NCBI RefSeq assembly: GCF_964204865.1
Contig: NC_135254.1
Span: forward strand, 1,426,001-1,490,000
Reading direction: 5' to 3'
From: Styela clava
Lineage: Eukaryota
DNA: 64,000 nt
The notes beneath the pieces are model-generated. The model ran no database searches. It was given only the letters and a program-made list of their open reading frames with translations, and had not been told where the DNA came from. Position 1 is the stretch's first letter; each line of letters begins with the position of its first letter. A program made the position numbers and the translations under genes. This document shows positions 1 through 52,722 of this stretch, piece after piece.

Positions 1-482
1 TACACTGAACAGTGATCAGTGAAGTGTGACTGGTCAGAATAATTTTGTGCTTGGTATATTTTATTTAATACTGGCTGGTAGTACTCTGAACAGTGATCAA
101 TGAAGTGTGGCTGGTCAGAATAATTTTGTGCTTGGTATATTTTATTTAATTCTGGCTGATAGTACTCTGAACAGTGATCAATGAAGTGTGGCTGGTCAGA
201 ATAATTTGTGCTTGGTATATTTTATTCAATAGTGGCTGATAGTACTTTGAACAGTGATCAGTGAAGTGTGACTGGCCAGAATAATTTGTGCTTGGTATAT
301 TTTATTCAATACTGGGTGATAGTACTCTGAACAGTGACCAATGAAGTGTGACTGGCCAGAATAATTTGTGCTTGGTATATTTTATTTAATACTGGTTGAT
401 AGTACTCTGAACAGTGATCAGTGAAGTGTGACTGGTCAGAATAATTTGTTGCTTGGTATATTTTATTTAATACTGGCTGATA
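1..482. repeat. Tandem minisatellite, ~80-81 bp unit, 6 copies (may continue left of the window)
   Basis: Unit TACTCTGAACAGTGATCAGTGAAGTGTGACTGGTCAGAATAATTTGTGCTTGGTATATTTTATTTAATACTGGCTGATAG repeats head-to-tail with no spacers. About 1.6 units are at the paralogous site 46668-46800. Confidence 0.95.
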
Positions 483-1694
483 AGTGGGCCGGTTACAGAT
501 AATAGACTTGGTTGCTGGGCCAAAGGCTTAAAACTCAATATGAAAAACTGAATAAAAAGATTTATTTACAACAGCTAGGCTAACTAACGTTTATATAAAG
601 CACAATGTCACAATTGAGGTCACTAAAACTATAGTTGTAATTTAAGCAGAAACACTTCGGTTGGCCGGATCCGACCTACGGTCTATCATTTTGACCCCCC
701 CTTATATTGCCGCCGTGTATATGAGTACCTTTTGGGTCGCTAGAAAACGAGGTGAGCTGTGAAGCAAATAATGTCATCTTCAAGGAATCTTAAGTTTGCC
801 ATTCTTGAATTTGTAATTTTGATTAAATAATTTTTGGGAGAACTGTTTCACGAATAATATTCACTTAGAATTGTGTATGGACTGAATTACTAGAGATTGC
901 AAATACATAATTGGTTGTTCAGTTTTTTATTTTTTTATTGTTCATGTTACTGTGGAATTGATTTAATTTTACTAGTTTTTGCATTTCTTTTTATTTTATT
1001 TGCATGGTATTGTGTCAGGTATATTTGATGTTTTTATGACTTTTTGGTTAAGGCAGGTGTAACTCAACTATTAAATTTGTTCCTTGGTGCTAGTCTATCT
1101 TGGGTATTGGAATATGTAATATTTATTTACCAGCTGTTACACTGATAGTAACTGTACAACAGCGATCATGGCACATAGTTATCTCCCACAGGATTCGAAC
1201 AAGATAAGCAAAATCATATATGCACTGTCATGCTTCATTGATTCTACTCGGTAGGTTCAAATGCCACCAAACCCGATTGTACTGGAATATTCTGCACAAA
1301 CCTGGGTGGTATTTTACTTAGTTAGTTTGCTTGGTGGAAACCTTTGTGCACTTTAGTGTTGTCGAATAGGTTTAGATTTCTTCGAAAAACTTACCGGTAG
1401 GTTCTTAGGTTCTTCCTTGTCCATATACCTGTTTGAAAAAATTTAGTTTTAAATAATTTTGTATGAGGATTTTTTTGGTTGTATTACATTTGCATGGTAT
1501 TGTGTCTGTTAGGTTTTAGCACAGTGTTTGGCAAATGCTCGGGTCGCGAGATGTTAGAAATATTTTTAGGGTTGTGCCAATCGCGCCAGAAAGTGCTTAC
1601 AGACCATAAGTTAATGTGATATTAGTCCGTAAGTGGTTCAGAGCACAAAAAAAGAACTCTGGAACTAGGTTTTTAGGATAGGATATGATTTACA

Positions 1695-1980
1695 TATTCA
1701 TCCTGAGAGAGAGGAAAGTTACCATTCTATGTCGGGTATATGATTAGTTAGTTATTTGTTCTCTGAAGCATGGACTCGATGGTGGAGGAAGCCGTAAGCG
1801 ACCAGCGGTTACGTAAACCACCCTACGGCGGCGAGGAGTCCAGCAATCCTCTCGCATATAACCATCCCCGCGTGGGATTCGATCCTGCGAACCCACGCAG
1901 GGTAATCAGAGTTGTGGTGGCGAGCGTATTCCTAACGCTTAGCATGATGAGCCACACTGTCACGCTGCTTGTGCTGAGTT
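1695..1980 (-). mobile_element. tRNA-derived SINE-like element
   Basis: Minus strand has A-box-like TGGCTCATCATG and B-box-like GGATCGAATCCC. Related copies lie at ~48195-48330 (internally deleted) and ~57690-57970. Confidence 0.6.
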
Positions 1981-2319
1981 AAATGAAGCGTTTTAAATAC
2001 TTTACTGCTGGTTGTTATTCTCAGTTCAAATCTGTATCTTGGTCAAAGTTTCAATTTTGGGGTGCAAGCACTCATGCACTGAGATCTGTGTTCCACCATA
2101 ATTAGGGCCTCTTTAACAAGAGCCATAATATTTGGCAACAATTTTTATGTGTGGGCAGTCGATCTGGAATGCTTTTCCTTTTTGTAAATGGAAAGTTGGG
2201 ATAATTACGAAATGTAAGCAGTTGGTTAGAGAAAGTGAGATTTACAGAATAATGCTTTATTTATCTTTTGTCATTTCGGATCATATTTTGGTTTTAGTTT
2301 CGAAGCTGTTTTAGTTTGC

Positions 2320-2420
2320 GGTACCCCCCGAAGTATGTGTACCAGGTTAGGGTTAGGCCATAATTTCAGGTACAAATACTACGGGAGTCACGTGTCTAGT
2401 CTTCGAACTCATAACAAGGG
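2320..2420. mobile_element. Partial copy of the palindromic MITE family carrying GGTTAGGGTTAGG
   Basis: GTATGTGTACCAGGTTAGGGTTAGGCCATAAT is shared with complete copies at 58569-58785 and 59147-59340. Confidence 0.7.
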
Positions 2421-3390
2421 CCATAATTTGTTTATGCAACGACAGGTGATTTTCTTTTGGTAAAAGGAAATTGTTCTGGATTAAATACTTACCAAACTTT
2501 AGGAAGCTGGTTGGAGAAAGTGAGATTTACAGAAATATTGTTTGTCACGATTTGTGACGAATGAATGTACATAACATTTTTTAAAAACATACAAACCAGG
2601 ATGTGCTAAATAGGCCTATAGTTTCATACAGACATACTGATGCACAAAAATTCTTCAGTTTAAAATCGATAGTGAGAATTGTTGTCTTGTTCTAGAATAG
2701 CAAGGCAATTCATCACAGTAAAACCATAGTAGCTTCAGAAATAGGCTTATTTTTATCTTTTGTCATTTCAGATCATATTCTGGTCTTAGTTTCGAAGGTG
2801 TACTTGGATAGTATCTTATTTTCCTTTTGAAGTTTGTCTTTGCTTTCTCAAAACCTTAAAGTGTCACGTAATCAAACTTGGTTTTACTGTGGCGATTCAG
2901 GTTGTAAAAACCTCTTGTTTGTTGAAGGTGACATAGTGCTCAATCACAATATTCACTTTTTCATGTAATTTTTTGTTTGTCCGAATATATGGTGTAAATG
3001 GCAATAAAGAAATAGTATGTTTCTTCAAGTACAAGCCACATCGCTACAGTAAAACAAAACTAGCTCATTCTTCAAAAATGAACCTTTTTAATTTGTGTCA
3101 TGACGTAGCAAAGGCCATTTTTGGGTTTTAGTTTCAATGCTGTTCCTGTTTTAGATTTCAGATAGTACCTTATGTCCATTTTTGAAGTTAGACCGTTAGA
3201 ATCCGACTATTACAACCTTTGAATAAGCAAATTGGTTTTACTGTGGCGATCCAGGTTATTTATTCCTGTAATCATCTCTTGGTTGTTGAAGTTGTGAAAA
3301 CCAATATTTACTCTTTCTTTGTTCCCCCGAATATATTACTGCAGTTTTAAATACAGAAATAGTATAGTAGTATCTCCAATTATCGGAGAT

Positions 3391-6300
3391 ATGAGTGACC
3401 GACTAGAAGATGTGATCAGAGGATGTGTGAGACAATTTGCTTCAACTGTTGATTTCACAACCTTCGCACAATCTGGGAACGGACTCTCACTCAGTGTGCA
3501 AGATGTCACTACGGTCATTGAAAACCACAGATTCTCTGTTGAAGAACAGAAGAAGAAATTGTTCTGGCTTTGGGTCGAAAGGAACCAACCGAATGTAACA
3601 GCACAAAGGATAAGGAATCTTGTTACACGATACCATGCAGCTGAACAACAAGGCGCTGCTGCTCCTATTGGCAGACTTGAAGATGTTTTTCAAGATGTTA
3701 TTAAACGATTTACATCCAAGGAATTCAAGCAGTTTGCGGGATCAGGGCAGGGATTATCTCTTACTGAGTATGAAGTTGACACTATCACAGAAAATAATAG
3801 ATTCTCAGTGGAGGAGCGAAATCTTAAATTACTGTGGAAATGGAGGCATTCTAAGTATCCAAACACTAATGATGCAGCTGTGATAGAAAGAATAAGAGCA
3901 GTGGTTGGGCTTTATGTTCAAGATGCAAATCGAGTAGAGGAAGAACAGTTCATTCAGGAAGATGGAGACAGAATGCTGGAATCATTCAAAAAACTTTCTG
4001 TGAAACCAACTCAAACAACTGAAGTTTCAGAAGAAAAAGAATTTCTTGAAGTCGTGAAAAATTATACAAAGCAGATGTTGGAATCTCGATTGGAATCCGC
4101 CAGTGAAAAAACAAAAATGGATGATTTTATACTTCCCAAGGTGACTGAGTTCAAGGAATCCGAATCCAACAAACAGAGTAGTTTGCAATCAGTGGATATC
4201 ATGAAGATTCATTATGATAACTCAGTCAACCGTGTGATGTTGCTAGGAGACACAGGCTCAGGAAAAACAACATTCTCGATGAAATATGCATTGTCAGCGT
4301 TAGAAAATAAATTAAACTTTTCGAATGAAATTAAGATGGTCTATTTCGTTGATGTTTCTAATTTACAAGGTGATTCTCAATCAACTGCTTTTGATCTTCT
4401 ATTCGTTCAACAACTTGGTTCGAAACTTCCCGAGCATCTCCATCGTGTTGGACAAAAGTGGTTGAAACTGAATTCAAAACATATTCTACTTGTAGTTGAT
4501 GGGTTGGATCAGAGTCTGAAGCCTTTTGCAAATAATTATGGAAGAATTGGAGTGGACACTCTAGCGGAAACCAACACTATTCTCGCTAATATTTTATCCG
4601 GCCACATGTATCCAGGAATGAAGATTTTGTCAACGACTCGTTGGAATGTTTATTGGAAGTTGCCTCCATCTATCAAGGCCACCTTGAATCTCACCTTAGG
4701 GGGATGGGATGATAAAACACTGGAACTTCTTGCTGGAAAGTTATTTAGTCCTGACGCAAGAAAAATATTTGATGATTTGAGACGTAAAGCACCAGGTTTT
4801 GTTTCAAATCCGATGTTTTTTTTCTACTTGGTTCGAGTTTTAAAAGATTTCAAAGAAAGCGATGTTGATACTTTAACAAATCTGATGGTTTCTGTTTTGA
4901 ACCTTTTTTCAGGATCTCGTCATGGACAAAATGTCGGAAGTCTGTTATTGGAACTCATGAAGTTGGCTTACCACGGAATGATAGAGAATCGATTTGTTTT
5001 CACTGCAAGCTATATTAGATCACTTAAGTTGAATATGAATGACATGCGTGGTCTTGTTGAGATGGATGCTGACACTCGATTTGTTGAGTATGTTGCGGGT
5101 GACAACGACATCAGCTTACGGTTTTCACACCAGAGTATAGGAGAGATACTTGCTGCCCTGTATGCCTGTACTCTTGATTTGGATGAATACAAGAAGTTTA
5201 TCGAGAATTATTATAATAAACCAGGAATGGAAGTCGTTATAAAACATACTTTTGGAATTATTCTCAACAAATCAACTTCAGAAAAAGCAGCAAAATATCT
5301 TCCTGATAACTTGCATATCAAGTCTGAATACCTGATGGGCTACTTGGATAAATTATTGAAAGGAAGAGTCATTTCAGATAAACGAGTCGTGACTTTATTA
5401 CTTGAATGTGGTCCTGATGTGATCAAGAAAGTTTGCTCACAAATAGAAAAGATGGATTTGATGTCAGTCCAACTTGGAGATCAGCATGCAGTGATGTCTG
5501 TTGCTGATCATAGTTTTTCATTTCATACTTTGAAACTATTGAGATTGGAAATACATCCTGGGAATTATTATTTCCTGCAACATGTTCTTGGTTCTGTGCA
5601 GAATGTTGATGTGGAATTCTTCCATCTTATCAATTGTGATTCTGATGCTGAGAATCTTCGAATCCTGAATGAAACCGTGATGAAAGGAAACCTTAAGATT
5701 AGGTGGGACCTCACAATAAGAGAAAGTCCAGCACTTGAACCACTTGGTTATTATTATCTAATTGGATTGGTTTGTCATGGTGGTGCGGAAGGGCTTGAAC
5801 TGAGTGGCTGTGACCTGAATGCAGAGAAAATAAGTAAGATAAACCAAGCAGTCATTGAATATGATGTGAGGTTGAATTCATTGAATATTGATGCGGATCC
5901 TAACATGGATGCAGAAGCATTTCAACAATTGCCCCAATTATTAGGGAATGCAAAGACTGAAGATATCACACTGAATGACTGTGACCTGAATGCAGAGAAA
6001 ATAAGTAAGATGAATCAAGCAGTCATTGAATACGGTGTCAAGTTGGATTCATTGGATATTTATAGGAATCCTAATATGGATGCAGACGCATTTCAACAAC
6101 TGGCAAAGTTTCTGAAAAATACTGAGGTTAAAGATCTGTGGACACAAGATTGCATTCCAACCATTGAGCAGTTATCAGATTTTTGTTCAAGTTTAGAAAA
6201 TGAAGATGTCAAGTTGTCTCGCTTAATCCTGGGAAGATCAACTATAGAATCTCTCACTGATGATGAACTGATGATTGTTTCTAGATTGGTTCAGAGGGTG

Positions 6301-6444
6301 GAAGAGCTCGGGTTTTCTTGTCAAAAGTTGCCTGAGTCAAAGATGGAATTCCTGATTAAGGAAACTGCGAGACTTTGTCCAAGTGCAAAGATGAATAGTG
6401 ACTCATGGACTATCTATATAAGAAATCCAATTGTGAAATGCTGA
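3391..6444 (+). CDS. NLR-A: tandem Death-like domains + NACHT + LRR, single coding exon, 1017 aa from ATG 3391
   Basis: Two ~90-aa N-terminal repeats with a Death-domain-like pattern (LSLTEYEVDTITENNRFSVEERNLKLLWKWR). Walker A GDTGSGKTT, Walker B ILLVVDGLDQ, sensor-1 ILSTTR, NPMF, winged-helix FSHQSIGEILAALY, and RI-like LRRs with a 57-aa double unit. The track's 3319 start is a TTG; a candidate splice acceptor TACAG ends at 3356. Confidence 0.92.
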   Translation: MSDRLEDVIRGCVRQFASTVDFTTFAQSGNGLSLSVQDVTTVIENHRFSVEEQKKKLFWLWVERNQPNVTAQRIRNLVTRYHAAEQQGAAAPIGRLEDVFQDVIKRFTSKEFKQFAGSGQGLSLTEYEVDTITENNRFSVEERNLKLLWKWRHSKYPNTNDAAVIERIRAVVGLYVQDANRVEEEQFIQEDGDRMLESFKKLSVKPTQTTEVSEEKEFLEVVKNYTKQMLESRLESASEKTKMDDFILPKVTEFKESESNKQSSLQSVDIMKIHYDNSVNRVMLLGDTGSGKTTFSMKYALSALENKLNFSNEIKMVYFVDVSNLQGDSQSTAFDLLFVQQLGSKLPEHLHRVGQKWLKLNSKHILLVVDGLDQSLKPFANNYGRIGVDTLAETNTILANILSGHMYPGMKILSTTRWNVYWKLPPSIKATLNLTLGGWDDKTLELLAGKLFSPDARKIFDDLRRKAPGFVSNPMFFFYLVRVLKDFKESDVDTLTNLMVSVLNLFSGSRHGQNVGSLLLELMKLAYHGMIENRFVFTASYIRSLKLNMNDMRGLVEMDADTRFVEYVAGDNDISLRFSHQSIGEILAALYACTLDLDEYKKFIENYYNKPGMEVVIKHTFGIILNKSTSEKAAKYLPDNLHIKSEYLMGYLDKLLKGRVISDKRVVTLLLECGPDVIKKVCSQIEKMDLMSVQLGDQHAVMSVADHSFSFHTLKLLRLEIHPGNYYFLQHVLGSVQNVDVEFFHLINCDSDAENLRILNETVMKGNLKIRWDLTIRESPALEPLGYYYLIGLVCHGGAEGLELSGCDLNAEKISKINQAVIEYDVRLNSLNIDADPNMDAEAFQQLPQLLGNAKTEDITLNDCDLNAEKISKMNQAVIEYGVKLDSLDIYRNPNMDADAFQQLAKFLKNTEVKDLWTQDCIPTIEQLSDFCSSLENEDVKLSRLILGRSTIESLTDDELMIVSRLVQRVEELGFSCQKLPESKMEFLIKETARLCPSAKMNSDSWTIYIRNPIVKC

Positions 6445-6623
6445 AGTCGAATTATTATTTCAAGAAATTCTGAACAAGCTCAGTGAAGCGCGAGTTTCCA
6501 AGCATGAAGCATCCAAAGATACTTCACAAATATCCAACCTATTTTCAATTAACCCAAAACCACAAAATACTGTTGAATACCGGGCAATCCTGCATTTCAT
6601 CTTGCGAGGCCTACACTTCAAAT

Positions 6624-7214
6624 CAGGGGTGTGTAACTTTTAAATATCGGAGGGCCAAAACAAATAACTGGCCAAAAGCGTGTGCCGAATCTTTATTTCT
6701 TGTTATTGATCGTATGGCTTCATTAAGACTCCTTGCGGAAATGATGAGTTGAGACGCATAAATTTCTGGAGAAAATTGCTATTCAAATTTACTAACACTT
6801 AGACTTTAAACGAAGTCGATGGGACATTTGCAGATGGTTTTATTTCCCAACTACCAAATTTGCTTTAATGAAAATGTTAGCAATTTGAAGCCCATTATCC
6901 AAGTGTTTGTCTGTCAGAACTGATTGATAGGGGATTTCATATCGCCCATTTTAGAGCAAAATTGTTTGCAAAAATATGTTTAGCAAAAAAATGCCATTTT
7001 CGAATTTTTTTCAACATGGTAAGTATCTTGGTTGAATTAATTTCAATAAAAAAATCGCCAACATTCATTTTCAAATACTTTAAATCTGTTTTACGAAATG
7101 GACTGATGACATCATACGTATAGAATAAGTATAATAGGCCGGACACCATTCTGAATTGGCACTTGTCTGCGGGTGGAAAATTTTTTCCTGCGGGCCGCAG
7201 TTTGCATACTCCTG
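6624..7214. mobile_element. hAT-type MITE present only in copy A
   Basis: Ends CAGGGGTGTGTAACT and AGTTTGCATACTCCTG; 8-bp TSD CTTCAAAT/CTTTAAAT; empty site (CTTTAAAT) in copy B near 52982. Confidence 0.85.
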
Positions 7215-8907
7215 CTTTAAATGAAGGAATCAGACTATTATTATCACTGGTATATTTATTCTGAATTCTGATTAGATTTATTAGAAACTTTCCATTTTAC
7301 ATATTTTGACTTGATAGAACAGCCACTCAGACGTGCATATTCTTAATTAAATTAAACTGTAAGTTATACATTCTTATTTAGTGTGGCAATATATTTTCAG
7401 TGTGTGTTTATATTTTTAATAAAAATCTTCAAATATTTTACTTAAGTATGCTTTCGTAACTTTTATTCAACTGTTTTGAGGTAATTGATGCACAACTTGC
7501 ACAAGTTAAATTAAATATAATACTTTTTGATCCCTAATGCAACCAATATGTCACAATTCTATTTCTCATCATTGTTCTTTGTTGATGAAGTATAATGCCC
7601 CCATTTTTTATACATTCTTTTATTACTGTAAATATTAACTAATCTGTGTATTCTTGTGATTTAGCTTACTGTAGGCGATAATATATTAAGTCTTGTTTTT
7701 ACAAGAGCATTTTGGGATTTATAACTCATATAGAGATGTAACCTGGATATACTGGGAGTAGCTGTACCTGGGTATACTGAGCTGAACAGTCTGGTGAATG
7801 AAACGAGTAATTCTTGAATGGTTTTCATATTTAATTTTTTGATGAATTTCCAAATTTCCAGTCAAATTTTCTTTGAATTGAAACTGGTTTCGTAAACAGG
7901 TAAAAACATAGTAAATGCTCGTAGAGGGAGAATGTTCAATAAGTGGTCACATTTGGGCACAAAACTCTGTATTTTAAATATTATTTAATTTGGAGGTGTT
8001 TTTCTGATTGCAGATATGGCATAATACGAATGCATTGCCTCAGCGTAAAATAGAGATAAAAAACTGAGTAAATGGAAATGAATACAGATATAAAATGCTA
8101 TTTTTTCTGATGCTGCAACGGCTCTCACCCCTGCGTAACTGTTTTCCCGATATTTCTCTCGCTTTCATTTTGCGTTATAAAGGTGTCTCTACTAATTCCC
8201 GGTGTCTTATGATTAGCCATTTCATGCATGGTCATAACTGAAAAGTTATTATCTGGAGTAACAATGACGTTTTATAAAGTGACGTTTTTGAGAGAGTACA
8301 CAATGAGAAAAAGGCAAATTTAGTGTCAACATTAAACGGTGGTTCTATAAATAGAATCGATTGGAATCTGGTGAGTTGGTAATCACAGAAACATGGTACA
8401 AGTAGCTCAAAGCAATAATGTCAGTTCCGAATTTGTGACCTCCTCAAATTCAATTTTGATTTTCTTTTGATTTATTATCACGATTCACTTTGAAATATAT
8501 CAATTTATAATTTTTAATACCCTTAACATATGCCCATAGTTATATTGAAAAATGTCAGATTAACAATTCTTTTTCCTGGAAATAGCTGGACTGATATTGA
8601 AGTAGCAGGAAAAGTTACAGAATAACATTTGTTCAAGCATTAACTGGACTTAGTTAAATAAAAGTCTCACTGCCATGATAATAAATACCAAAATGAAACT
8701 ACAGGCTCACGAGTTTCGTCATAAAAGCATGGCTCAAAATATGATTTATATTAATATTGGCGTATCGGTTATCGGCCACTAGTTGGCCGATATATCGATA
8801 TCGACGTCAAAAAGTGATATCAATCGAGCTCTCCTTGTAACCGAAACCAATTTTTTTTATCCCTCTCTCTCCCTTCCTCATTAAATAAAAGTTTCTTTCC
8901 TGCTCAG

Positions 8908-9122
8908 AAGATCTCGCCAGACATGCTGGAAGATGATAATTTTTTTGACCTTATCACAAGACTTCAAGGTCGTAGGATGGACGACCAACGATGTGAAATG
9001 AGAGACGACCAATCTGAATTACCAGCGTTTTTAAGACCAAACCCCCCAGATCCCCCCTCAAATCATCACCCCGCGGAGAATGGGGCATTGGAGGGAACGA
9101 GAACTCATTGGAAATGATGGGG
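8908..9122 (+). pseudogene. Orphan GoLoco-motif exon (GPSM1/2-like first GoLoco), copy A
   Basis: Acceptor TTTCTTTCCTGCTCAG, then DDNFFDLITRLQGRRMDDQRCEM (GoLoco pattern FFxLxxxxQxxRMDDQR). Donor GTGAGT at 9123; in-frame stop at 9115-9117 just before it. Confidence 0.8.
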
Positions 9123-9269
9123 GTGAGTCTTCTTCCACAATTTTTTTTTAAATTGTTGCGAGTGGTTAACCCATGGGGAAACAGTAAACAGTGGACATAG
9201 TCATTCTACGATGCAGCTAAAGAGAATATTTTTTTTAATGGATCGTTGTGTTATTATGTTGTTCTTTTT

Positions 9270-35990: not shown

Positions 35991-38936
35991 ATGTCCACAA
36001 CCCCTAGTCGATACCTCGAAATATCCGATATCGACACAGTATCATCCAGCTTCTTATTGTCAGATCTTATTATTTTACATCTTAACATAAGATCCGTGGC
36101 TAAATATGCGGATGACCTGATAGAACTTATATCTAATTTTCATATCGCACCACAAATTATCGCCTTAAGCGAAACTAGGATCCATATTGAGGGTACCATT
36201 AGCAAAATTGACATTCCTGGTTACATATTCATTCACGCTCCCTCCCCAACTCAAGCGGGTGGTGTGGGATTTTACATTAAAAATACCGTGAATTATCAAA
36301 TAAGTCATGAATTCAACCTATCTTTTCAAAACTGTGAGGACCTGTGGATCGAGATGAAGTATTCCCAACCAAACTCAAAAATCCTAAGCCTCATTATTGG
36401 TGTGATTTATAAGCACCCTAAGCGAAACATTCCATCTTTCACTGGGGCAATGGCTAGTTTATTTGACAAGTTGGCTTTAGCCAAAAAGCAATTCTTAATC
36501 CTAGGAGACTTTAATATAAACCTTCTTGATAATCATGACAACTCGACTTCTCAATATTTAGATATGCTCATGTCCAAGTTCGTGTTTCCAATTATCACAA
36601 AACCCACAAGAGTCACCTCATCCTCCCATACATTGATAGACCATATATATACCAACACCACAAAATTTTGTTCGTCATTTATTCTTCTCAGTGATCTTAC
36701 TGATCATTTCCCAATAATGTGTATTCTACCAACAACTAATGTCAATGTTAAGACAAAAAGTCGCATGAAACGTGACATGGCTAAATTTTCTGCAGATTCA
36801 TTCAGATCTGAAGTTGAGTCGATGTGTGACAATTACACCAGTGCTATCTTAGGAGAGGAAAATTTCAATAGCTCATTTGATCTCTTTCTTAACCATCTCA
36901 AGTGGCTAATTAACAAACATGCACCATTGAGACCCTTCTCTCGTCGAGAAAATAAATTATATTCTAAACCTTGGATCACCAGAGGAATCCGAAGGTCCAT
37001 TAAAAACAAAAATAATATGTTTAAAAAAAAGTACTTGAATGGTAATACTACTAATCGTCTGTACTTTAAAAATTACAAAAACATTTTGACGCATTTACAA
37101 CGAAAATCTAAACAAATGTATTATCACAATATCCTTGAGAACAACAGAGGAGATGTTAAACGAACTTGGAAAACCATAAATGACATTATCAGAGTCAAGT
37201 CCAGGGGTGAAACTACCATCCCTGAAGTGCTACTTGAAAATGGTACCTCTGTCACAGACCCAGTTCTAGTGGCTGCAGAATTCAACAAATTCTTCTCGAC
37301 TATAGGAAAGAAGCTTGCAGACAAAATCCCATATAGCTCAAAATCTTTTATGGAATTCTTGGGTACTCCTCTGAAGAATTCTTTTTTCCTCGAGCAAACA
37401 ACACCATCGGAAGTTTTTCATACCATTAAGAATCTGAAAAAGGTCAAAGCAGTTGGTCACGATGGCATCTCCTCTTACTTCCTGAAAATAGTTGGTGATA
37501 TTATTTCACCAGCACTAAGTCTTTTATTCAATAATTCTTTTCGTTCAGGAATATTTCCTTCGTCTTTAAAGATAGCCAGAGTTATACCAATATTTAAAAA
37601 TGGCAACAAAAATAATCCCTCAAATTATAGACCAATTTCTGTCTTATCTTCTATTGGCATTATTTTGGAAAAATTATTGCATACTAGAATGATCAGTTTT
37701 TGTACCAAATTTAACCTAATCGACAAAAGTCAATTTGGATTTCAGACTAGTCACTCAACAAGTCATGCTATTCTTGACGTTGCTTCATACATTTATGATA
37801 AAATAGACAAAGGCGAGTTCGTCTGCTGCACTTTTTTAGATCTTAAAAAAGCTTTCGATACAGTGAATCACAGTATCCTTACTCATAAGTTAGCACATTA
37901 CGGTTTCAGAGGTACCGCGGGCAAATTACTATGTGATTACCTGGCCAATAGATTCCAATATGTTGAATTGGGTTCCTATAGATCTCCAATGATGCCCATT
38001 CATTGTGGAATTGTGCAAGGATCTGTACTTGGACCTCTTGCGTTTCTGAATTTCATAAACGACTTATCTAACAGCTCAAATCTTTTGAGCAAATTATTTG
38101 CTGATGACGCTTGTCTGCTTGCCAGTGCGACAGATTTGACCACATTACAAAATAAGGTGAACACTGAAATGAATAAAATACATGACTGGATGACATGCAA
38201 TAAACTTACAGTAAATATAGATAAATCTAAAGTCATGTTATTCAGTCCAAACTCTCGCATTAGACATATGAATTTTTCAATAAAAATTAAAGGCTCCGAA
38301 TTGGAAATAGTCTCGTCTTATAAATATCTTGGGCTCCACATTGATAGTCAGTTAAAATGGAATACACACACCACTGAAATCCATAGAAAACTGTCAAGAT
38401 CCGTAGGGATTTTAGGAAAGCTAAAAAATTATTTACAAAATTCCACCTTGAGAACCGTTTACTTTGCACTTTTTCAATCTCATATACAATATGCCATAGC
38501 TGCTTGGGGCTCTACAACTCAGTCCAACATGCATAGATTAGAGGTTTTACAGAATAGAGCCGTTAGAATCCTCGCTAGAGCACCATATCGTTCGAATTTA
38601 AATTATTCATACCATAAAACTAGAGTGCTTAAATTGACTGACATCCATAAACTAGAAATCTCAAAAATTATGCATCAATTTCAAAACAATCAATTACCAG
38701 CAGCTTTTGACAATTATTTTGTCTCGCTAAGTTCAGTGCATGAACATAACACTCGTTCTTCAACAAGGCAAAACTACTTTGTTCCTCGCTTCTCACTTGC
38801 CAAATCCCAAAAGTCCCTCAAATTCATAGGTGTGCGAATTTGGAATAACCTACCCCAAACCCTACGTGATTCTTCTTATGCCACTTTCAAAATAGAGTAT
38901 AAAAAACTCATGATTTCCACCTACCGGTCCAGTTGA
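35991..38936 (+). CDS. LINE ORF2p: APE endonuclease + reverse transcriptase, 981 aa, uninterrupted
   Basis: HLNIRS, LSET, ILGDFN, TLIDH, TDHFP; NYRPIS, DLKKAFDTV, QGSVLGP, LFADDA, YKYLG. Confidence 0.95.
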   Translation: MSTTPSRYLEISDIDTVSSSFLLSDLIILHLNIRSVAKYADDLIELISNFHIAPQIIALSETRIHIEGTISKIDIPGYIFIHAPSPTQAGGVGFYIKNTVNYQISHEFNLSFQNCEDLWIEMKYSQPNSKILSLIIGVIYKHPKRNIPSFTGAMASLFDKLALAKKQFLILGDFNINLLDNHDNSTSQYLDMLMSKFVFPIITKPTRVTSSSHTLIDHIYTNTTKFCSSFILLSDLTDHFPIMCILPTTNVNVKTKSRMKRDMAKFSADSFRSEVESMCDNYTSAILGEENFNSSFDLFLNHLKWLINKHAPLRPFSRRENKLYSKPWITRGIRRSIKNKNNMFKKKYLNGNTTNRLYFKNYKNILTHLQRKSKQMYYHNILENNRGDVKRTWKTINDIIRVKSRGETTIPEVLLENGTSVTDPVLVAAEFNKFFSTIGKKLADKIPYSSKSFMEFLGTPLKNSFFLEQTTPSEVFHTIKNLKKVKAVGHDGISSYFLKIVGDIISPALSLLFNNSFRSGIFPSSLKIARVIPIFKNGNKNNPSNYRPISVLSSIGIILEKLLHTRMISFCTKFNLIDKSQFGFQTSHSTSHAILDVASYIYDKIDKGEFVCCTFLDLKKAFDTVNHSILTHKLAHYGFRGTAGKLLCDYLANRFQYVELGSYRSPMMPIHCGIVQGSVLGPLAFLNFINDLSNSSNLLSKLFADDACLLASATDLTTLQNKVNTEMNKIHDWMTCNKLTVNIDKSKVMLFSPNSRIRHMNFSIKIKGSELEIVSSYKYLGLHIDSQLKWNTHTTEIHRKLSRSVGILGKLKNYLQNSTLRTVYFALFQSHIQYAIAAWGSTTQSNMHRLEVLQNRAVRILARAPYRSNLNYSYHKTRVLKLTDIHKLEISKIMHQFQNNQLPAAFDNYFVSLSSVHEHNTRSSTRQNYFVPRFSLAKSQKSLKFIGVRIWNNLPQTLRDSSYATFKIEYKKLMISTYRSS

Positions 38937-48000: not shown

Positions 48001-49234
48001 TGTCTGTTAGGTTTTAGCACAGTTTTTGGCAAATGCTCGGGTCGCGAGATGTTAGAAATATTTTTAGGGTTGTGCCAATCGCGACAGAAAGTGCTTACAG
48101 AACCTGAGTTAGGTGATATTAGTCCGTAAGTGGTTCAGAGCACAAAAAAGGAACTCTGGAACTGTGCTTTTAGGATAGGATATGATTTACATATTCATCC
48201 TGAGGGAGGAGGCGGCGAGGAGTCCAGCAATCCTCGCGCATAATCCACGCGGAGTAATTAGAGTTGTGATGGCGAGCGTATTCCTAACGCTCAGCACGAT
48301 GAGCCGCACTGCCACGCCGCTTGTGCTGAGTTAAATGGAACGTTTTAAATACTTTACTGCTGGTTGTTATTCTCAGTTCAAATCTCTATCTTGGTTAAAG
48401 TTTCAATTTTGGGGTGCAAGCACTTGTGCACTGAGACCTGTGTTCCACAATAATTAGGGCCTTTTCAACAAGAGCCATAATATTGGCAACGAATTTTATG
48501 TGTGGGCAGTCGATCTCGAATGCTTTTTTTTGTAAATGGAAAGTTGGGATAATTACGAAATGTAAGCAGTTGGTTAGAGAAAGTGAGATTTACAGAAATA
48601 TTGCTTTATTTATCTTTTGTCATTTCGGATCATATTTTGGTTTTAGTTTCGATGCTGTTTTAGTTTGCGGTACCCCCCGAAGTATGTGTACCAGGTTAGG
48701 GTTAGGCCATAATTTTAGGTACAAATACTACGGGATTCACGTGTCTAGTCTCCGAACTCATAACAAGGGCCATAATTTGTTTATGCAACGGCAGGTGATT
48801 TTCTTTTGGTAAAAGGAAATTGTTCTGGATTAAATACTTACCAAACTTTAGGAAGCTGGTTGGAGAATGTGAGTTAACAGAAATATTGTTTGTCATGATT
48901 CGGGACTCATGAATGTAACATTTTTTACAAACATACAAACCATCTCAGCTGCATCAGATGTCTGTGCACAAATGTAAGAGACAAATTAAACCAGGATGGG
49001 CTAAATAGGCCTATAGTTTCATACAGACATAGTGATGCACACATTTCAGAAATTCTTCTGTTTAAAATCGATAGTGGGAATTGTTGTCTTGTTCTAGAAT
49101 AGCAATGCAATTCATCACAGTAAAACCATAGTAGCTTATGTCACATTCTTCAGAAATTTTTATTTTATCTGTTGTCATTTTGGATGATATATTGGATTTA
49201 GTTTCGAAGCTGTTTTTGTTTTGATTTCAGATAG

Positions 49235-49445
49235 AGTACTTCCGAAGTATGTGAACCAATATGGCGGACACCGGAACACAGTATGTGTACCAGGTTAGGT
49301 CATAATTTCAGGTGCAAATAATACGGGAGTCGCTTGGCTAGCCCCCGAACTAATTTTGGAATGAAATTATGGTCCAACCCTAACCTGGTATACCACGTTC
49401 CGGTGTCCGCCATCTTGGTTCACATACTTCATAGTACAGGAGTAA
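49235..49445. mobile_element. Palindromic GGTTAGG-family MITE private to copy B, ~160 bp upstream of the NLR-B ATG
   Basis: Inverted arms GAAGTATGTGAACCAATATGGCGGACACCGGAAC / GTTCCGGTGTCCGCCATCTTGGTTCACATACTTC; absent from the matching copy A region. Confidence 0.8.
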
Positions 49446-49602
49446 ATTGGTTCTACTGCAGCGATTCAGGTTGTAATTACCTCTTAGTAGTTGAAGCTAA
49501 CGAAGTGCTCAACCCAACATTCACTCTTTCTTGTTCCTCTCAATACAATAGAGTATTTTGCAATACAGAAATAGTATAGAAGTATCTCCAATTATCGGAA
49601 AC

Positions 49603-52600
49603 ATGAGTGACCGACTAGAAGATGTAATCAGAGGATGTGTGAGACAATTTGCCTCAACTGTTGATTTCAAAACCTTCGCACAATCTGGGAACGGACTCTC
49701 ACTCAGTGTGCAAGATGTCACTATGGTCATTGAAAACCACAGATTCTCTGTTGAAGAACAGAAGAACAAATTGTTCTGGCTTTGGGTTAATAGAAACCAA
49801 CCGAATGTAACTGTACAAAGGATAAGAAATCTTGTTACGCAATACTATGCGCTGGAACAACAAGGCGCTGCCGCTCCTATTGAAAGGCTTGAAGATGTTT
49901 TTCAAGATGTTGCAAAACGATTTTCATCCAAGGAATTCGAGCAGTTTGCGCAGTTTGCAAGATCAGGGCAGGGATTATCTCTTGGAGCACATGAAATAGA
50001 CGAGGTCATGGAAGATTATAAATATACAAGAGAGCGCAAACTTAAATTACTGTGGAAATGGAGGTATTCTAAGTATCCGAATACTAACAATGCAGCAGTG
50101 ATAGAAAGAATAAGAGCAGTGGTTGGACTTTATGTTCAAGATGCAAATCAAGTAGAGGAAGAGCAGATCATTCAGGAAGATGGAGACAGAATGTTGGAAT
50201 CATTCAAAAAACTTTCTGTGAAACCAACTCTACCAACTGAAGTTTCAGAAGAAAAAGAATTTCTTGAAGTCGTGAAAAATTATACAAAGCAGATGTTGGA
50301 ATCTAGATTGAAATCCGCCAGTGAAAAAACAAAAATGGATGATTTTATACTTCCCAGGGTTACCGAGTTCAAGGAATCCAACAAACAGAGTAGTTTGCAA
50401 TCAGTGGATATCAGGAAGATTCATTATGATAACTTAGTCAACCGTGTGATGTTGCTAGGAGACACAGGCTCTGGAAAAACAACATTTTCAATGAAATATG
50501 CATTGTCAGCGCTGGAAAAAAGTTTAAATTTTTCGGACGAAATTAAGATGGTCTATTTTGTGGATGTTTCTAATTTACAAGCGGATTCTAAATCAACCGC
50601 TTTTGATCTTTTATTCGTTCAACAACTTGGATCGAAACTTCCTGAGCATCTCCATCGTGTTGGACAAAAGTGGTTGAAACTGAATTCAAAACATATTCTG
50701 CTTGTAGTTGATGGGTTAGACCAAAGTCTGAAGCCTTTTGCAAATAATTATGGAAGAATTGGAGTGGACACTCTAGCGGAAACCAACACTATTCTTGCTA
50801 ATATTTTATCCGGCCACATATATCCAGGAATGAAGATTTTGTCAACGACTCATTGGAATGTTTATTGGAAGTTGCCTTCAGATCTCAAGGCCACCTTGAA
50901 TCTCACCTTAGGGGGATGGGATGATGAAACACTGAAACTTCTTGCTGGAAAGTTATTTAGTCCTGAAGCAAGAAAAATATTTGATGATTTGAGACGTAAA
51001 GCACCAGGTTTTGTTTCAAACCCGATGTTTTTTTTCTACTTGGTTCGAGTTTTGGAAGATTTCCAAGAAAGCGATGTTGATACTTTAACAAATCTGATGG
51101 TTTCTGTTTTGAAACTTTTTACAGGATCTCGTCAGGGACAAAATGTTGAAAGTCTGTTATTGGAACTCATGAAGTTGGCTTACCACGGAATGATAGAGAA
51201 TCGATTTGTTTTCACTGCAAGCTATATTAGATCCCTAAAGTTGAATATGACTGACATGCGTGGTCTTGTTGAGATGGATGCTGACACTCGAGTTGTTGAG
51301 TATGTTGCGGGTGACGACGACATGAGGTTACGGTTTCCACACCAGAGTATAGGAGAGATTCTTGCTGCCCTGTATGCCTGTACTCTTGATTTGGATGAAT
51401 TCAAGAAGCTTATAGAGAATTATTATGAGAAATCAGGAATGGAAGTCGTTATAAAACATACTTTTGGAATTATTCTCAACAAATCAACTTCAGAAAAAGC
51501 AGCAAAATATCTTCCTGATAACATGCATATCAAGTCTGAATACCTGATGGGCTACTTGGATAAATTATTGAAAGGAATAGTCATTTCAGATAGACGAGTC
51601 GTGACTTTATTACATGAATGTGGTTCTGATGTGATCAAGAAAGTTTGCTCACAAATAAAAAAGATGGATTTGATGTCAGTCCAACCTGGAGAACAGCATG
51701 CAGTGATGTCTGTTGCTGAGCATAGTCCTTCACTTCATACTTTGAAATTATTCTGCTTGTTTGTACATCCTGGAAATTATTATTTCTTGCAACATGTTCT
51801 TGGTTCTGTGCAGAATATTTATGCGGATTACTTCTATCTTAGCAATTGTGACTCTGATGCTGAGAATCTTCGAATCCTGAATGAAGCCGTGATGAAGGGA
51901 AACCTTAAGATTAAGTGGAGCCTCGTAATAAGAGAAAGTCCAGCACTTGAACCACTTGGTTATTATTATCTAATTGGAATGGTTTGTCATGGTAGGCTTA
52001 AACTGAGTAGCTGTGGCCTGAATGCAGAGAAAATAAGCAAGATGAATCAAGCGGTCATTGAATATGGTGTCAAGTTGTTTTCATTGAATATTGAAAAGGA
52101 TCCTAACATGAATGCAGAAGCATTTCAACAATTGCCTCAATTATTAGGGAATGCAAAGACTAATAATCTCACACTGAATGACTGTGGCCTGAATGCAGAG
52201 AAAATAAGTAAGATGAATCAAGCCGTCATTGAATATGGTGTCAAGTTGTTTTCATTGAATATTGAAAAGGATCCTAACATGAATGCAGAAGCATTTCAAC
52301 AATTGCCTCAATTATTAGGGAATTCGAAGACTAATAATCTCACACTGAATGACTGTGGCCTGAATGCAGAGAAAATAAGTAAGATGAATCAAGCCGTCAT
52401 TGAATATGGTGTCAAGTTGGACTCATTGAGGATTGGTGAGAATCCTAACATGGATGCAGAAGCATTTCAACAACTGGCAAAGTTGCTGAAAAATACTGAA
52501 GGAAAGTTTCTGTCTGCACAACATTGCACTCCAACAACTGAGCAGTTATCAGCTCTTTGTTCAAGTTTAGAAAATGAAGATGTCGAGTTGTCTCGCTTAA

Positions 52601-52722
52601 ACCTGGGAAGATCAACTACAGAATCCCTCACTGATGATGAACTGATGATTGTTTCTAGATTGGTTCAGAGGGCGAGAAAGCTCGAGTTCTTTTGTCAAGA
52701 GTTGTCCGAGTCAAAGATGTAA
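49603..52722 (+). CDS. NLR-B: tandem Death-like domains + NACHT + LRR, 1039 aa, with a late premature stop
   Basis: Paralog of NLR-A with the same Walker A/B and three 171-bp LRR units (CGLNAEK codons start 52012, 52183, 52354). TAA at 52720 replaces GAA of copy A, and the homologous frame continues 33 codons to TAG at 52822-52824. Confidence 0.9.
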   Translation: MSDRLEDVIRGCVRQFASTVDFKTFAQSGNGLSLSVQDVTMVIENHRFSVEEQKNKLFWLWVNRNQPNVTVQRIRNLVTQYYALEQQGAAAPIERLEDVFQDVAKRFSSKEFEQFAQFARSGQGLSLGAHEIDEVMEDYKYTRERKLKLLWKWRYSKYPNTNNAAVIERIRAVVGLYVQDANQVEEEQIIQEDGDRMLESFKKLSVKPTLPTEVSEEKEFLEVVKNYTKQMLESRLKSASEKTKMDDFILPRVTEFKESNKQSSLQSVDIRKIHYDNLVNRVMLLGDTGSGKTTFSMKYALSALEKSLNFSDEIKMVYFVDVSNLQADSKSTAFDLLFVQQLGSKLPEHLHRVGQKWLKLNSKHILLVVDGLDQSLKPFANNYGRIGVDTLAETNTILANILSGHIYPGMKILSTTHWNVYWKLPSDLKATLNLTLGGWDDETLKLLAGKLFSPEARKIFDDLRRKAPGFVSNPMFFFYLVRVLEDFQESDVDTLTNLMVSVLKLFTGSRQGQNVESLLLELMKLAYHGMIENRFVFTASYIRSLKLNMTDMRGLVEMDADTRVVEYVAGDDDMRLRFPHQSIGEILAALYACTLDLDEFKKLIENYYEKSGMEVVIKHTFGIILNKSTSEKAAKYLPDNMHIKSEYLMGYLDKLLKGIVISDRRVVTLLHECGSDVIKKVCSQIKKMDLMSVQPGEQHAVMSVAEHSPSLHTLKLFCLFVHPGNYYFLQHVLGSVQNIYADYFYLSNCDSDAENLRILNEAVMKGNLKIKWSLVIRESPALEPLGYYYLIGMVCHGRLKLSSCGLNAEKISKMNQAVIEYGVKLFSLNIEKDPNMNAEAFQQLPQLLGNAKTNNLTLNDCGLNAEKISKMNQAVIEYGVKLFSLNIEKDPNMNAEAFQQLPQLLGNSKTNNLTLNDCGLNAEKISKMNQAVIEYGVKLDSLRIGENPNMDAEAFQQLAKLLKNTEGKFLSAQHCTPTTEQLSALCSSLENEDVELSRLNLGRSTTESLTDDELMIVSRLVQRARKLEFFCQELSESKM

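What the first reader, a model, noticed from the sequence alone, without database searches (positions are those of the whole stretch)
5530..6330. A/B differences pile up on the exposed beta-strand positions of the LRRs
Seen: LRLEIH/FCLFVH, VDVEFFHLIN/IYADYFYLSN, RWDLTI/KWSLVI, NSLNIDAD/FSLNIEKD, EDITL/NNLTL, SLDIYRN/SLRIGEN, VKDLWTQD/GKFLSAQH and VEELGFSC/ARKLEFFC, while the helical parts and NACHT are almost invariant. Established: these xxLxLxx positions form the concave ligand face diversified in plant NLRs and lamprey VLRs. Inference: direct-recognition receptors under diversifying selection.
Basis: partly seen in the sequence, partly recalled or inferred. Interest (0 to 1): 0.85.

Follow-up and report, generated by a model that had tools for sequence, protein, structure and literature searches.

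The report
Sea-squirt NLR receptors with hypervariable binding face
Two neighbouring sea-squirt (Styela clava) genes belong to a cluster of intracellular NLR-type receptors (Death-NACHT-LRR) whose differences pile up on the inner, ligand-facing strands of the leucine-rich repeats. Amino-acid-changing substitutions there outrun silent ones several-fold, the same signature as plant disease-resistance genes.

Summary
Gene A (window 3391-6444) and gene B (49603-52722) are intronless Death-Death-NACHT-LRR paralogs of Styela clava.

**A/B differences.** An AlphaFold model (pLDDT 90) gives ten LRRs with a 28/29-residue period. Taking the x positions of LxxLxLxx as an a-priori class, 29 of 50 differ between A and B, against 26 of 220 other LRR positions (Fisher 3e-11).

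**Selection, not relaxation.**
- A/B dN at those positions is 0.47, against dS of 0.12-0.14 (omega 3.3-3.8). Other LRR positions give omega 0.31 and the NACHT module 0.45.
- 44 of 45 pairs among ten close paralogs give omega 2.4-9 at those positions.
- My own codon-model fits give M1a/M2a LRT 217 and M7/M8 LRT 240, with about 17% of LRR codons at omega about 7.4.
- 26 of the 31-32 sites with posterior above 0.95 are a-priori concave positions.
- The Death region shows none and the NACHT module one such site. Null simulations, with and without recombination, give LRT of 6 or less.

- The rest of the protein is about 89% identical, not "almost invariant".
- Domains have discordant trees, so paralogs exchange modules.
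- B carries a premature stop, a unique sensor-1 R-to-H change and one extra repeat unit.
- "Direct recognition" remains untested.

This is a new, uncharacterised member of a known kind.

The parts
3391..6444 (+). Gene A: intronless ORF, 1017 aa, Death-Death-NACHT-LRR (ATG 3391, stop 6442-6444)
   Evidence: ORF list and translation; Pfam Death, NACHT, NOD2_WH; 90% identical to an S. clava 'uncharacterized protein LOC120344542'. RNA-like public runs cover only about 3302-6650 of 2900-6900.
3391..3990 (+). Two tandem Death-like domains (aa 1-95 and about 96-200)
   Evidence: Pfam Death, E 1.5e-6 in A and 3.8e-7 in B; the internal repeat aligns at 46% identity. No positive selection: M0 omega 0.42, M1a/M2a LRT 0.5.
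4231..5526 (+). NACHT NTPase plus helical/winged-helix module. Walker A at 4246-4269, Walker B at 4486-4512, sensor-1 Arg417 at 4639-4641.
   Evidence: Pfam NACHT 52 bits; NOD2_WH 19.5 bits, below its cut-off. Motifs are invariant in 12 paralogs except R417H in B. M0 omega 0.34, with one selected site, aa 691.
5527..6384 (+). LRR solenoid of gene A: ten ribonuclease-inhibitor-type LRRs (aa 713-998), 28/29-residue period
   Evidence: AF2 model, pLDDT 90.2, pTM 0.87. Foldseek top hits are NLRP3, NLRP9 and ribonuclease inhibitor, E 2e-8 to 1e-6. M0 omega 1.06; about 17% of codons at omega about 7.4.
5536..5559 (+). LRR1 strand motif LxxLxLxx (aa 716-723); selected x2, x3 (x5 high)
5611..5634 (+). 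LRR2 strand motif (aa 741-748); selected x2, x3, x5
5698..5724 (+). LRR3 strand motif with one inserted residue (aa 770-778); selected 771, 772, 773, 775
5785..5808 (+). LRR4 strand motif (aa 799-806); selected 801, 803, 806, plus x10 (808). B has a 3-aa deletion here.
5872..5895 (+). LRR5 strand motif (aa 828-835); selected 829, 834, 835
5956..5979 (+). LRR6 strand motif (aa 856-863); weakest signal (x2, x7 at intermediate omega)
6043..6066 (+). LRR7 strand motif (aa 885-892); selected 886, 889, 891, 892
6127..6150 (+). LRR8 strand motif (aa 913-920); selected 915, 917
6214..6237 (+). LRR9 strand motif (aa 942-949); selected 944, 946, 948
6298..6321 (+). LRR10 strand motif (aa 970-977); selected 972, 974
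6343..6441 (+). C-terminal cap of A (last helix plus beta-hairpin, aa 985-1017), absent from B's ORF
   Evidence: AF2 secondary structure; alignment
49603..52722 (+). Gene B: paralog, 1039 aa, same architecture, 86% aa identity to A
51739..52719 (+). LRR region of gene B (from aa 713)
52243..52413 (+). Extra 57-aa double LRR unit in B, a near-exact tandem copy of the preceding unit
52720..52722 (+). Premature stop in B: TAA where A and the paralogs have GAA (A codon 986). Homologous frame stays open for 32 more codons.
50851..50853 (+). B sensor-1 Arg417 replaced by His (CGT to CAT), unique among 12 paralogs

Best explanation
A and B are two members of a recently expanded, clustered family of intronless intracellular NLR-type receptors of the tunicate Styela clava. 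The architecture is two Death-fold domains, a NACHT NTPase, and ten or more ribonuclease-inhibitor-type LRRs.

Shown:
- The solvent-facing residues of the LRR beta-strands (x2, x3, x5, x7 and partly x8 of LxxLxLxx), which line the concave face of the predicted horseshoe, evolve under strong diversifying selection (omega about 7 on about 17% of LRR codons).
- The strand core, the helices, the NACHT module and the Death domains are under purifying selection.
- Diversity is redistributed by exchange of whole domains or modules between paralogs, and by gain and loss of 57-aa double LRR units (1 to 28 per gene).

Inferred from what is established for NLRs and LRR proteins:
- The concave face is the specificity-determining binding surface, and each paralog recognises a different, fast-changing ligand, most likely pathogen-derived.
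- Binding releases NACHT autoinhibition.
- NTP-dependent oligomerisation then brings the Death domains together to recruit death-fold partners and start a cell-death or inflammatory response.

B may be a recently disabled copy: it has a premature stop that removes the C-terminal cap, and a sensor-1 R417H change.
For: Architecture: Pfam; AF2 LRR model, pLDDT 90; Foldseek to NLRP3, NLRP9 and ribonuclease inhibitor.

Family: at least 12 close paralogs on contig C5 at 0.9-1.48 Mb, plus more distant ones; all database relatives are S. clava.

A/B clustering: 29/50 against 26/220, p = 3e-11.

Selection:
- A/B concave dN 0.467 against dS 0.122 (own codons) or 0.142 (whole LRR); other LRR omega 0.31; NACHT 0.45.
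- 44/45 pairs give omega 2.4-9.
- Five disjoint pairs give Fisher p from 3e-8 to 1e-4.
- M1a -3747.67 against M2a -3639.09, LRT 217. M7/M8 LRT 240, omega_s 7.4, p 0.17.
- 26 of 31-32 sites with P above 0.95 are a-priori concave, p about 1e-17.
- Periodic omega profile over the ten repeats.
- Each third of the LRR gives LRT 74-79 on its own tree.

Controls: NACHT 0.8% of sites and Death none. Null simulations give LRT of 0.5 or less, and 6 or less with three discordant trees. Non-coding flanks of the A/B duplication are 92-97% identical, while the LRR-coding end is 86%.

Module exchange: discordant domain trees. A and L007 share an LRR (bootstrap 100, dS 0.034) but not the Death or NACHT parts; L010 and L011 are sisters in Death and NACHT but not in the LRR.

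Transcription: RNA-like runs cover the ORF plus about 200 nt only.
Against: - No ligand, expression response or signalling partner is known, so immune function is by analogy only.
- Site-model LRTs are known to be inflated by recombination, which is evident here. I bounded this only with small simulations (3-4 replicates) and block-wise fits.
- The ML code is my own. It uses NEB rather than BEB posteriors, and branch lengths were only rescaled for M7/M8.
- Solvent exposure was inferred from the LRR register and DSSP strands, not computed from coordinates.
- In more distant paralog pairs, concave omega falls to 0.8-1.8 because those sites saturate.
- Private substitutions outside the concave sites are near the neutral N:S ratio in several paralogs including B. 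Some copies may therefore be decaying or carry segregating mildly deleterious variants.
- Allelic variation could not be separated from paralogous contigs.
Confidence: 0.75

Rival explanations
1. Same receptors and same selection, but the diversified face serves self/non-self recognition within the species (allorecognition, gamete or tissue compatibility), or tracks a co-evolving family of endogenous partners. This would parallel fungal het-type NLRs rather than pathogen sensors.
For: Diversifying selection on a repeat surface with module exchange is also the hallmark of fungal allorecognition NLRs (PMC4986451 and PMC12222747, abstracts seen). Tunicates have well-known allorecognition and self-sterility systems (general knowledge). 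Nothing here identifies the ligand.
Against: Styela clava is a solitary ascidian. The proteins appear cytosolic, with a death-fold signalling end typical of pathogen or danger sensors. Diversity here is between paralogs fixed in one genome, and no allelic series was shown.
Confidence: 0.12
2. Indirect or antagonistic arms race. The concave face does not bind a pathogen ligand to activate the receptor. It changes either to escape pathogen-encoded inhibitors that dock there, or to guard a set of host proteins.
For: The signature (omega above 1 on one face) is identical for any antagonistic protein-protein interface. In vertebrate NLRs the LRR concave side also contacts regulators such as NEK7 on NLRP3 (structures hit).
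Against: Seventeen percent of LRR codons spread over all ten repeats is more typical of a broad recognition surface than of a single inhibitor footprint. There is no direct evidence either way.
Confidence: 0.08
3. No positive selection. The pattern is relaxed constraint on surface residues in decaying duplicates, combined with a gene-conversion mosaic that lowers dS and inflates the site-model tests.
For: dS is mosaic along the gene, from 0 to 0.48, and domain trees conflict. B has a premature stop and a sensor-1 change. Private N:S ratios outside the concave sites are near neutral in several copies.
Against: - Relaxation gives omega near 1, not 2.4-9 in 44/45 pairs or 7.4 in the site models.
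- Concave non-synonymous divergence also exceeds whole-gene synonymous divergence and flank divergence.
- Other LRR positions stay at omega 0.3-0.55.
- Recombination-null simulations give LRT of 6 or less, against 217.
- All but one close copy keep intact ORFs of 1000 aa or more.
Confidence: 0.04
4. A targeted mutational process (local hypermutation, or short-tract conversion from divergent repeats) hits the strand codons without selection.
For: Synonymous divergence at concave codons is about 1.7-fold that of other LRR codons (0.163 against 0.097). Identical strand variants recur in different repeats and paralogs.
Against: Non-synonymous divergence is 7.7-fold higher at the same codons (0.418 against 0.054), so in-class omega is still 2.6-3.8. 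The adjacent core codons L4 and L6, interleaved with the x codons, are conserved, which no tract-based process would spare.
Confidence: 0.02

Closest known systems
Death-NACHT-LRR receptors ('NLRD') of sea urchin, amphioxus and sponge
   Same: Same domain order, with a death-fold N-terminus, NACHT and RI-type LRRs. Also lineage-specific multigene expansion in an invertebrate deuterostome (PMC11508797).
   Different: This family has two tandem Death-like domains, is intronless and is found only in Styela clava among database hits. That review describes ascidian (Ciona) NLRs as lacking an N-terminal effector domain. I found no report of site-specific LRR selection for those families in the library searched.
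Plant NLR resistance genes, especially highly variable NLRs (hvNLRs)
   Same: Clustered paralogs; omega above 1 or high entropy concentrated on the xxLxLxx solvent-exposed strand residues of the LRR concave face; sequence exchange between paralogs; variable repeat number (PMC8226289 and PMC3782705, seen; established knowledge).
   Different: The nucleotide-binding domain is NACHT, not NB-ARC. The LRRs are the 28/29-residue RI type, not the plant-specific 24-residue type. The N-terminus is Death, not CC/TIR. This is independent (convergent) evolution, and allelic hypervariability was not shown here.
Zebrafish NLR-B30.2 (NLR-C) family
   Same: Hundreds of clustered NLR genes shaped by gene conversion acting differently on different domains; variable LRR number, up to more than 20 (PMC4852459).
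   Different: In zebrafish the LRRs are 'not particularly variable' and positive selection sits in the added B30.2 domain. Here there is no B30.2 and the LRR concave face itself is the diversified module.
Lamprey/hagfish variable lymphocyte receptors (VLRs)
   Same: Diversity concentrated on concave beta-strand residues of an LRR solenoid with a variable number of LRR modules (general knowledge).
   Different: VLRs are extracellular, have no NACHT or Death domain, use a different LRR class with LRRNT/LRRCT caps, and are somatically assembled from cassettes. Here diversity is germline, between paralogs.
Vertebrate NLRP3 / NLRP9 / ribonuclease inhibitor LRR domains
   Same: Best structural matches of the predicted LRR horseshoe: Foldseek E from 2e-8 to 1e-6, TM 0.5-0.66.
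   Different: Only 14-19% sequence identity. There was no sequence-level hit to any PDB chain. The vertebrate proteins are few and mostly conserved.

Membership tests
Animal NLR (NACHT-LRR) receptors | NACHT-type STAND NTPase domain with Walker A and Walker B | tested here: met
   Pfam PF05729 scores 52.4 and 49.5 bits against a cut-off of 26.7. Walker A GDTGSGKT and Walker B LLVVDGLDQ are invariant in 12 paralogs.
Animal NLR (NACHT-LRR) receptors | Winged-helix / helical domains following the NACHT | tested here: inconclusive
   NOD2_WH scores 19.5-20.5 bits, below its 23.1 cut-off. No structure was predicted for this part.
Animal NLR (NACHT-LRR) receptors | C-terminal ribonuclease-inhibitor-type LRR horseshoe | tested here: met
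   AF2 model with pLDDT 90 and ten strands at a 28/29 period. Foldseek hits to NLRP3, NLRP9 and RI.
Animal NLR (NACHT-LRR) receptors | N-terminal death-fold effector domain | tested here: met
   Pfam Death scores 28.7 and 30.6 bits against a cut-off of 22.6. There are two tandem copies.
Animal NLR (NACHT-LRR) receptors | Ligand-induced NTP-dependent oligomerisation and signalling | not testable with these tools
   No biochemical data. Complex prediction on the Death domains gave no verdict.
Plant-type hypervariable NLRs (works-like comparison) | dN/dS above 1 concentrated on the x residues of xxLxLxx | tested here: met
Plant-type hypervariable NLRs (works-like comparison) | NB-ARC nucleotide-binding domain | tested here: not met
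   The domain is NACHT. This is not a member, only an analogue.
Plant-type hypervariable NLRs (works-like comparison) | High allelic diversity within the species | tested here: inconclusive
   Variant contigs hit concave codons 745, 773 and 946, but several variants match states of other paralogs, so alleles and paralogs cannot be separated.
Variable lymphocyte receptors | Somatic assembly from flanking LRR cassettes; secreted or GPI-anchored; LRRNT/LRRCT caps | tested here: not met
   The germline ORFs are complete, with NACHT and Death domains and RI-type LRRs. Somatic rearrangement itself is not testable here.

The most novel reading that the evidence does not exclude
Styela clava runs a plant-like, germline-encoded intracellular 'resistance gene' system. 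Each Death-NACHT-LRR paralog binds a different pathogen or non-self ligand directly on its hypervariable concave LRR face. Specificity modules are swapped between paralogs and extended by unit duplication, up to a 2490-aa receptor with 28 double units. Signalling may go through homotypic Death-domain recruitment of the RNase L/IRE1-like kinase-RNase proteins, which carry an 80% identical N-terminal Death domain. That would be an NLR-to-RNase pathway not known in animals.
Probability: 0.2. Interest if true: 0.8.

Novelty: new member of a known kind. Interest (0 to 1): 0.55.

Why it matters
In the large animal NLR expansion I could check (zebrafish NLR-B30.2), the LRRs are reported as not particularly variable and an added B30.2 domain appears to carry specificity. 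So it is still debated whether animal NLR LRRs are true specificity determinants, as they are in plants.

This tunicate cluster gives a clean, quantitative case in the closest invertebrate relatives of vertebrates. The concave LRR strand residues carry a strong, periodic signal of diversifying selection, while everything else is conserved. That points to convergent evolution with plant NLRs.

It also supplies a concrete list of about 30 candidate contact residues and about a dozen natural variants for binding and chimera experiments. Finally, it shows that tunicate NLR repertoires can be large: at least 194 NACHT loci in this genome. This contrasts with the small Ciona repertoire as I recall it (not checked here).

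Tried and rejected
- **Plain MAFFT alignment.** The first alignment of full-length paralogs produced chimeric alignment inside the repeated 57-aa units of multi-unit genes. I discarded it, removed units beyond the first using a fixed anchor and re-aligned.
- **Whole-LRR pairwise omega.** It is about 0.8-1.0, so on its own it does not show selection. Only the site-class split does.
- **M8a.** It failed numerically (an omega = 0 class) and is not reported. M1a/M2a serves as the conservative test.
- **PDB sequence search.** No hit.
- **Complex prediction.** Run on A's two Death domains with the Death domain of the kinase-RNase protein P0010. No verdict (score 0.00, controls not run). This is neither support nor evidence against binding.
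- **Allelic variation from public runs.** Only short Logan contigs could be laid, and the variants could not be separated from paralogs. The RNA label of runs X5, X7 and X13 is the tool's guess.
- **Giant paralog's 26 internal units.** The trend is the same but weaker (concave omega 2.6 against 0.50), and the B-type strands are nearly uniform there. It reflects recent unit amplification rather than an independent test.
- **Literature searches.** I found no report on Styela clava NLRs or on strand-specific LRR selection in invertebrate NLRs. The library is limited to open-access papers.
- **Earlier-findings look-up by words.** It returned only unrelated LRR families of the same genome.
Full report
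**What is there**

The window is Styela clava contig C5:1426001-1490000. It holds two long intact ORFs on the + strand.
- Gene A runs from ATG 3391 to stop 6444 and encodes 1017 aa.
- Gene B runs from ATG 49603 to stop 52722 and encodes 1039 aa.
- A LINE-type reverse-transcriptase ORF lies between them.

Pfam finds Death and NACHT domains, plus a sub-threshold NOD2 winged helix, in both proteins. The N-terminus is two tandem Death-like domains.

The C-terminal 346 residues of A, folded with an alignment of 16 paralogs, give a confident model (pLDDT 90.2, pTM 0.87). It is an alpha/beta horseshoe with ten LRR strands and a C-terminal hairpin cap. Its best structural matches are the LRR domains of NLRP3, NLRP9 and ribonuclease inhibitor. 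No PDB chain matches by sequence.

The first core residue of each strand motif sits at A residues 716, 741, 770, 799, 828, 856, 885, 913, 942 and 970. Apart from the 25-residue first interval this is a 28/29 spacing, and it fixes the LxxLxLxx register independently of variability.

**The family**

A six-frame search of the same genome finds at least 12 close paralogs (79-94% aa identity) on contig C5 between 0.90 and 1.48 Mb. Nearly all have intact single ORFs of about 1000 aa. More distant members lie on C9, C14, C16 and C18.

The number of 57-aa double LRR units varies. Some paralogs have one, A has two, B has three and L008 has four. One 2490-aa gene at C5:5.206-5.214 Mb has 28.

All database relatives are Styela clava 'uncharacterized' proteins. 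The genome has at least 194 NACHT candidate loci.

The A/B duplication unit extends from about window 350 to 9150. The matching B-side stretch is 46667-56687. Non-coding flanks are 92-97% identical, and the LRR-coding end is 86% identical.

**Check of the observation**

All eight quoted motif pairs are real and fall on predicted strands. I defined the concave class a priori as x2, x3, x5, x7, x8 of each of the ten motifs, plus one inserted residue in LRR3.

| Site class | A/B positions differing | Fisher p against concave class |
|---|---|---|
| Concave x positions | 29 of 50 | - |
| Other LRR positions | 26 of 220 | 2.8e-11 |
| Positions before the LRRs | 77 of 709 | 2.8e-14 |

The rest of the protein is therefore about 89% identical, not 'almost invariant'.

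**Selection or relaxation?**

For A against B, Nei-Gojobori counts give the following.

| Region | dN | dS | omega |
|---|---|---|---|
| Concave x positions | 0.467 | 0.122 (own codons) or 0.142 (whole LRR) | 3.8 or 3.3 |
| Other LRR positions | 0.045 | 0.149 | 0.31 |
| NACHT module | 0.045 | 0.099 | 0.45 |
| Death region | 0.071 | 0.200 | 0.36 |

Further tests:
- **Pairwise, ten close paralogs.** 44 of 45 pairs give concave dN over LRR dS of 2.4 to 9. The exception is A against L007, whose LRRs are nearly identical.
- **Disjoint pairs.** In five disjoint pairs the concave non-synonymous proportion exceeds the LRR synonymous proportion (one-sided Fisher p from 3e-8 to 1e-4). It also exceeds the whole-gene synonymous proportion.
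- **Site models.** No codeml or HyPhy was available, so I wrote a Goldman-Yang F3x4 likelihood. The data were 11 sequences and 286 LRR codons on an IQ-TREE topology.
  - M0 gives omega 1.06.
  - M1a lnL is -3747.67 and M2a is -3639.09, an LRT of 217. M2a puts 16.8% of codons at omega 7.5.
  - M7 lnL is -3759.56 and M8 is -3639.44, an LRT of 240. M8 puts 17.4% of codons at omega 7.4.
- **Where the selected sites fall.** Of 31 (M2a) or 32 (M8) sites with posterior above 0.95, 26 belong to the 51 a-priori concave sites (Fisher about 1e-17). In M8, 21 are in DSSP strands and only 4 are in helices.
- **Periodicity.** Averaged over the ten repeats, posterior omega at successive motif positions is as follows.

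| L1 | x2 | x3 | L4 | x5 | L6 | x7 | x8 | C9 |
|---|---|---|---|---|---|---|---|---|
| 1.1 | 5.7 | 5.9 | 0.7 | 6.5 | 0.5 | 4.7 | 2.5 | 0.5 |

This is the in/out alternation of a strand whose even face is solvent-exposed.

**Controls**
- The same models on the NACHT module give M0 omega 0.34 and one selected site (aa 691, just before the LRRs).
- On the Death region they give omega 0.42 and LRT 0.5.
- Each third of the LRR, on its own tree, gives LRT 74-79 with the same kind of sites. This includes the non-repeated LRR1-3 and LRR8-10, so misalignment of repeated units is not the cause.
- Data simulated under M1a on the fitted tree give LRT of 0.5 or less.
- Data simulated under M1a with three different topologies for three blocks, a recombination null, give LRT of 6 or less and at most 1.7% of sites in the selected class.
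- In more distant paralog pairs the concave sites saturate (pN 0.35-0.49). Omega then falls to 0.8-1.8, still 2.3-3.7 times that of other LRR sites.

**Recombination is real and part of the story**

dS between A and B ranges from 0 to 0.48 along the gene. Domain trees conflict in three ways.
- B groups with L005 (bootstrap 98), and that pair with L007 (100), in the Death region.
- A groups with L007 in the LRR (bootstrap 100, LRR dS 0.034) but not in the NACHT (dS 0.119).
- L010 and L011 are sisters in the Death and NACHT regions but not in the LRR.

So whole modules move between paralogs that lie up to 450 kb apart. Synonymous divergence of the LRR scaffold (0.10) is lower than that of the NACHT (0.17), while concave dN is 0.42. 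Homogenisation of the scaffold with retained differences at the x codons itself requires selection for diversity.

**State of gene B**

B ends at a TAA where A and the paralogs read GAA (window 52720-52722). The homologous frame continues for 32 codons. B therefore lacks the last helix and hairpin cap.

B alone of 12 paralogs has His instead of the sensor-1 Arg (CGT to CAT, window 50851-50853). It also has a 3-residue deletion in LRR4.

B may be a recently disabled copy. Its overall omega outside the concave sites (0.3-0.45) shows that most of its divergence arose under constraint.

**Transcription**

Contigs of three small, probably RNA, public runs cover only about 3302-6650 of the laid stretch 2900-6900. 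A large, DNA-like run covers all of it. This fits a single-exon transcript. However, the RNA label is the tool's guess and close paralogs can contribute contigs.

Variants in those contigs hit concave codons 745, 773 and 946. Several match paralog states, so allelic diversity remains open.

**Mechanism**

Shown: the architecture, the fold class, the site-specific selection, the module exchange and the unit-number variation.

Inferred from established NLR and LRR biology:
- The concave face binds the ligand.
- Binding relieves autoinhibition of the NACHT.
- Oligomerisation clusters the Death domains for downstream signalling.

Whether the ligand is pathogen-derived and directly bound, a guarded host protein, an inhibitor to be escaped, or a conspecific non-self cue cannot be decided from sequence.

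One lead: the first Death domain is 80% identical over 103 residues to the N-terminus of S. clava proteins that continue into a protein kinase and an RNase L/IRE1-type ribonuclease domain. A complex prediction gave no verdict.

**Comparison and novelty**

Death-NACHT-LRR ('NLRD') receptors are known from sea urchin, amphioxus and sponge. A recent survey lists ascidian (Ciona) NLRs as lacking an N-terminal domain (PMC11508797).

Diversifying selection on xxLxLxx is the classic plant NLR pattern (PMC8226289, PMC3782705). In the best-studied large animal expansion, zebrafish NLR-B30.2, the LRRs are reported as not particularly variable and selection sits in the B30.2 domain (PMC4852459).

I found no paper on S. 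clava NLRs, or on this pattern in invertebrate NLRs, in the searchable library.

I therefore file this as a new, uncharacterised member of a known kind: an animal NLR that behaves like a plant hvNLR through convergence. It is not a member of the plant family, because its nucleotide-binding domain is NACHT and not NB-ARC.

**Housekeeping**

Nothing was left out for safety reasons.

Noticed in passing
window 3391-3699; proteins P0009, P0010 (genome hits at C1:30982949-30983260 and C1:31035075-31035407): The first Death-like domain of the NLRs is 80% identical over 103 aa to the N-terminus of S. clava proteins that continue into a protein kinase plus a Ribonuc_2-5A (RNase L/IRE1-type) domain. These are a possible homotypic signalling partner, or the result of domain shuffling.
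   Followed up: partly
L031 (G000:C5:5205000-5214999), ORF on the - strand: A giant intact paralog of 2490 aa with 28 consecutive 57-aa double LRR units. The units form higher-order blocks, which implies recent tandem amplification.
   Followed up: partly
L007 (G000:C5:969254-974674) against window 5527-6384: A paralog 450 kb away, in opposite orientation, has an LRR region nearly identical to A's (LRR dS 0.034). Its NACHT (dS 0.119) and Death region group elsewhere, so a whole LRR module was recently transferred between paralogs.
   Followed up: partly
G000 contig C2, about 0.02-8.9 Mb: About 60 near-identical NACHT-encoding open frames of about 467 aa, many of them spaced roughly 80-110 kb apart. 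This is a separate, very regular NACHT array. The genome as a whole has at least 194 NACHT candidates.
   Followed up: no
window 35991-38936 (+): An intact 981-aa ORF of a non-LTR (LINE-type) retrotransposon, judged by eye from the translation to be endonuclease plus reverse transcriptase (no domain search was run), between the two NLR genes.
   Followed up: no
L017/L019 (G000:C5:902128-907841): A broken family member. The ORF is split in two, and the C-terminal part has 4 TGA and 1 TAG stops inside the match. This shows that some copies in the cluster are pseudogenes.
   Followed up: no
window 5449-5475 (A aa 687-695): The short strand and loop just before LRR1 varies in length and sequence between paralogs, and holds the only selected site found outside the LRRs (aa 691).
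   Followed up: no
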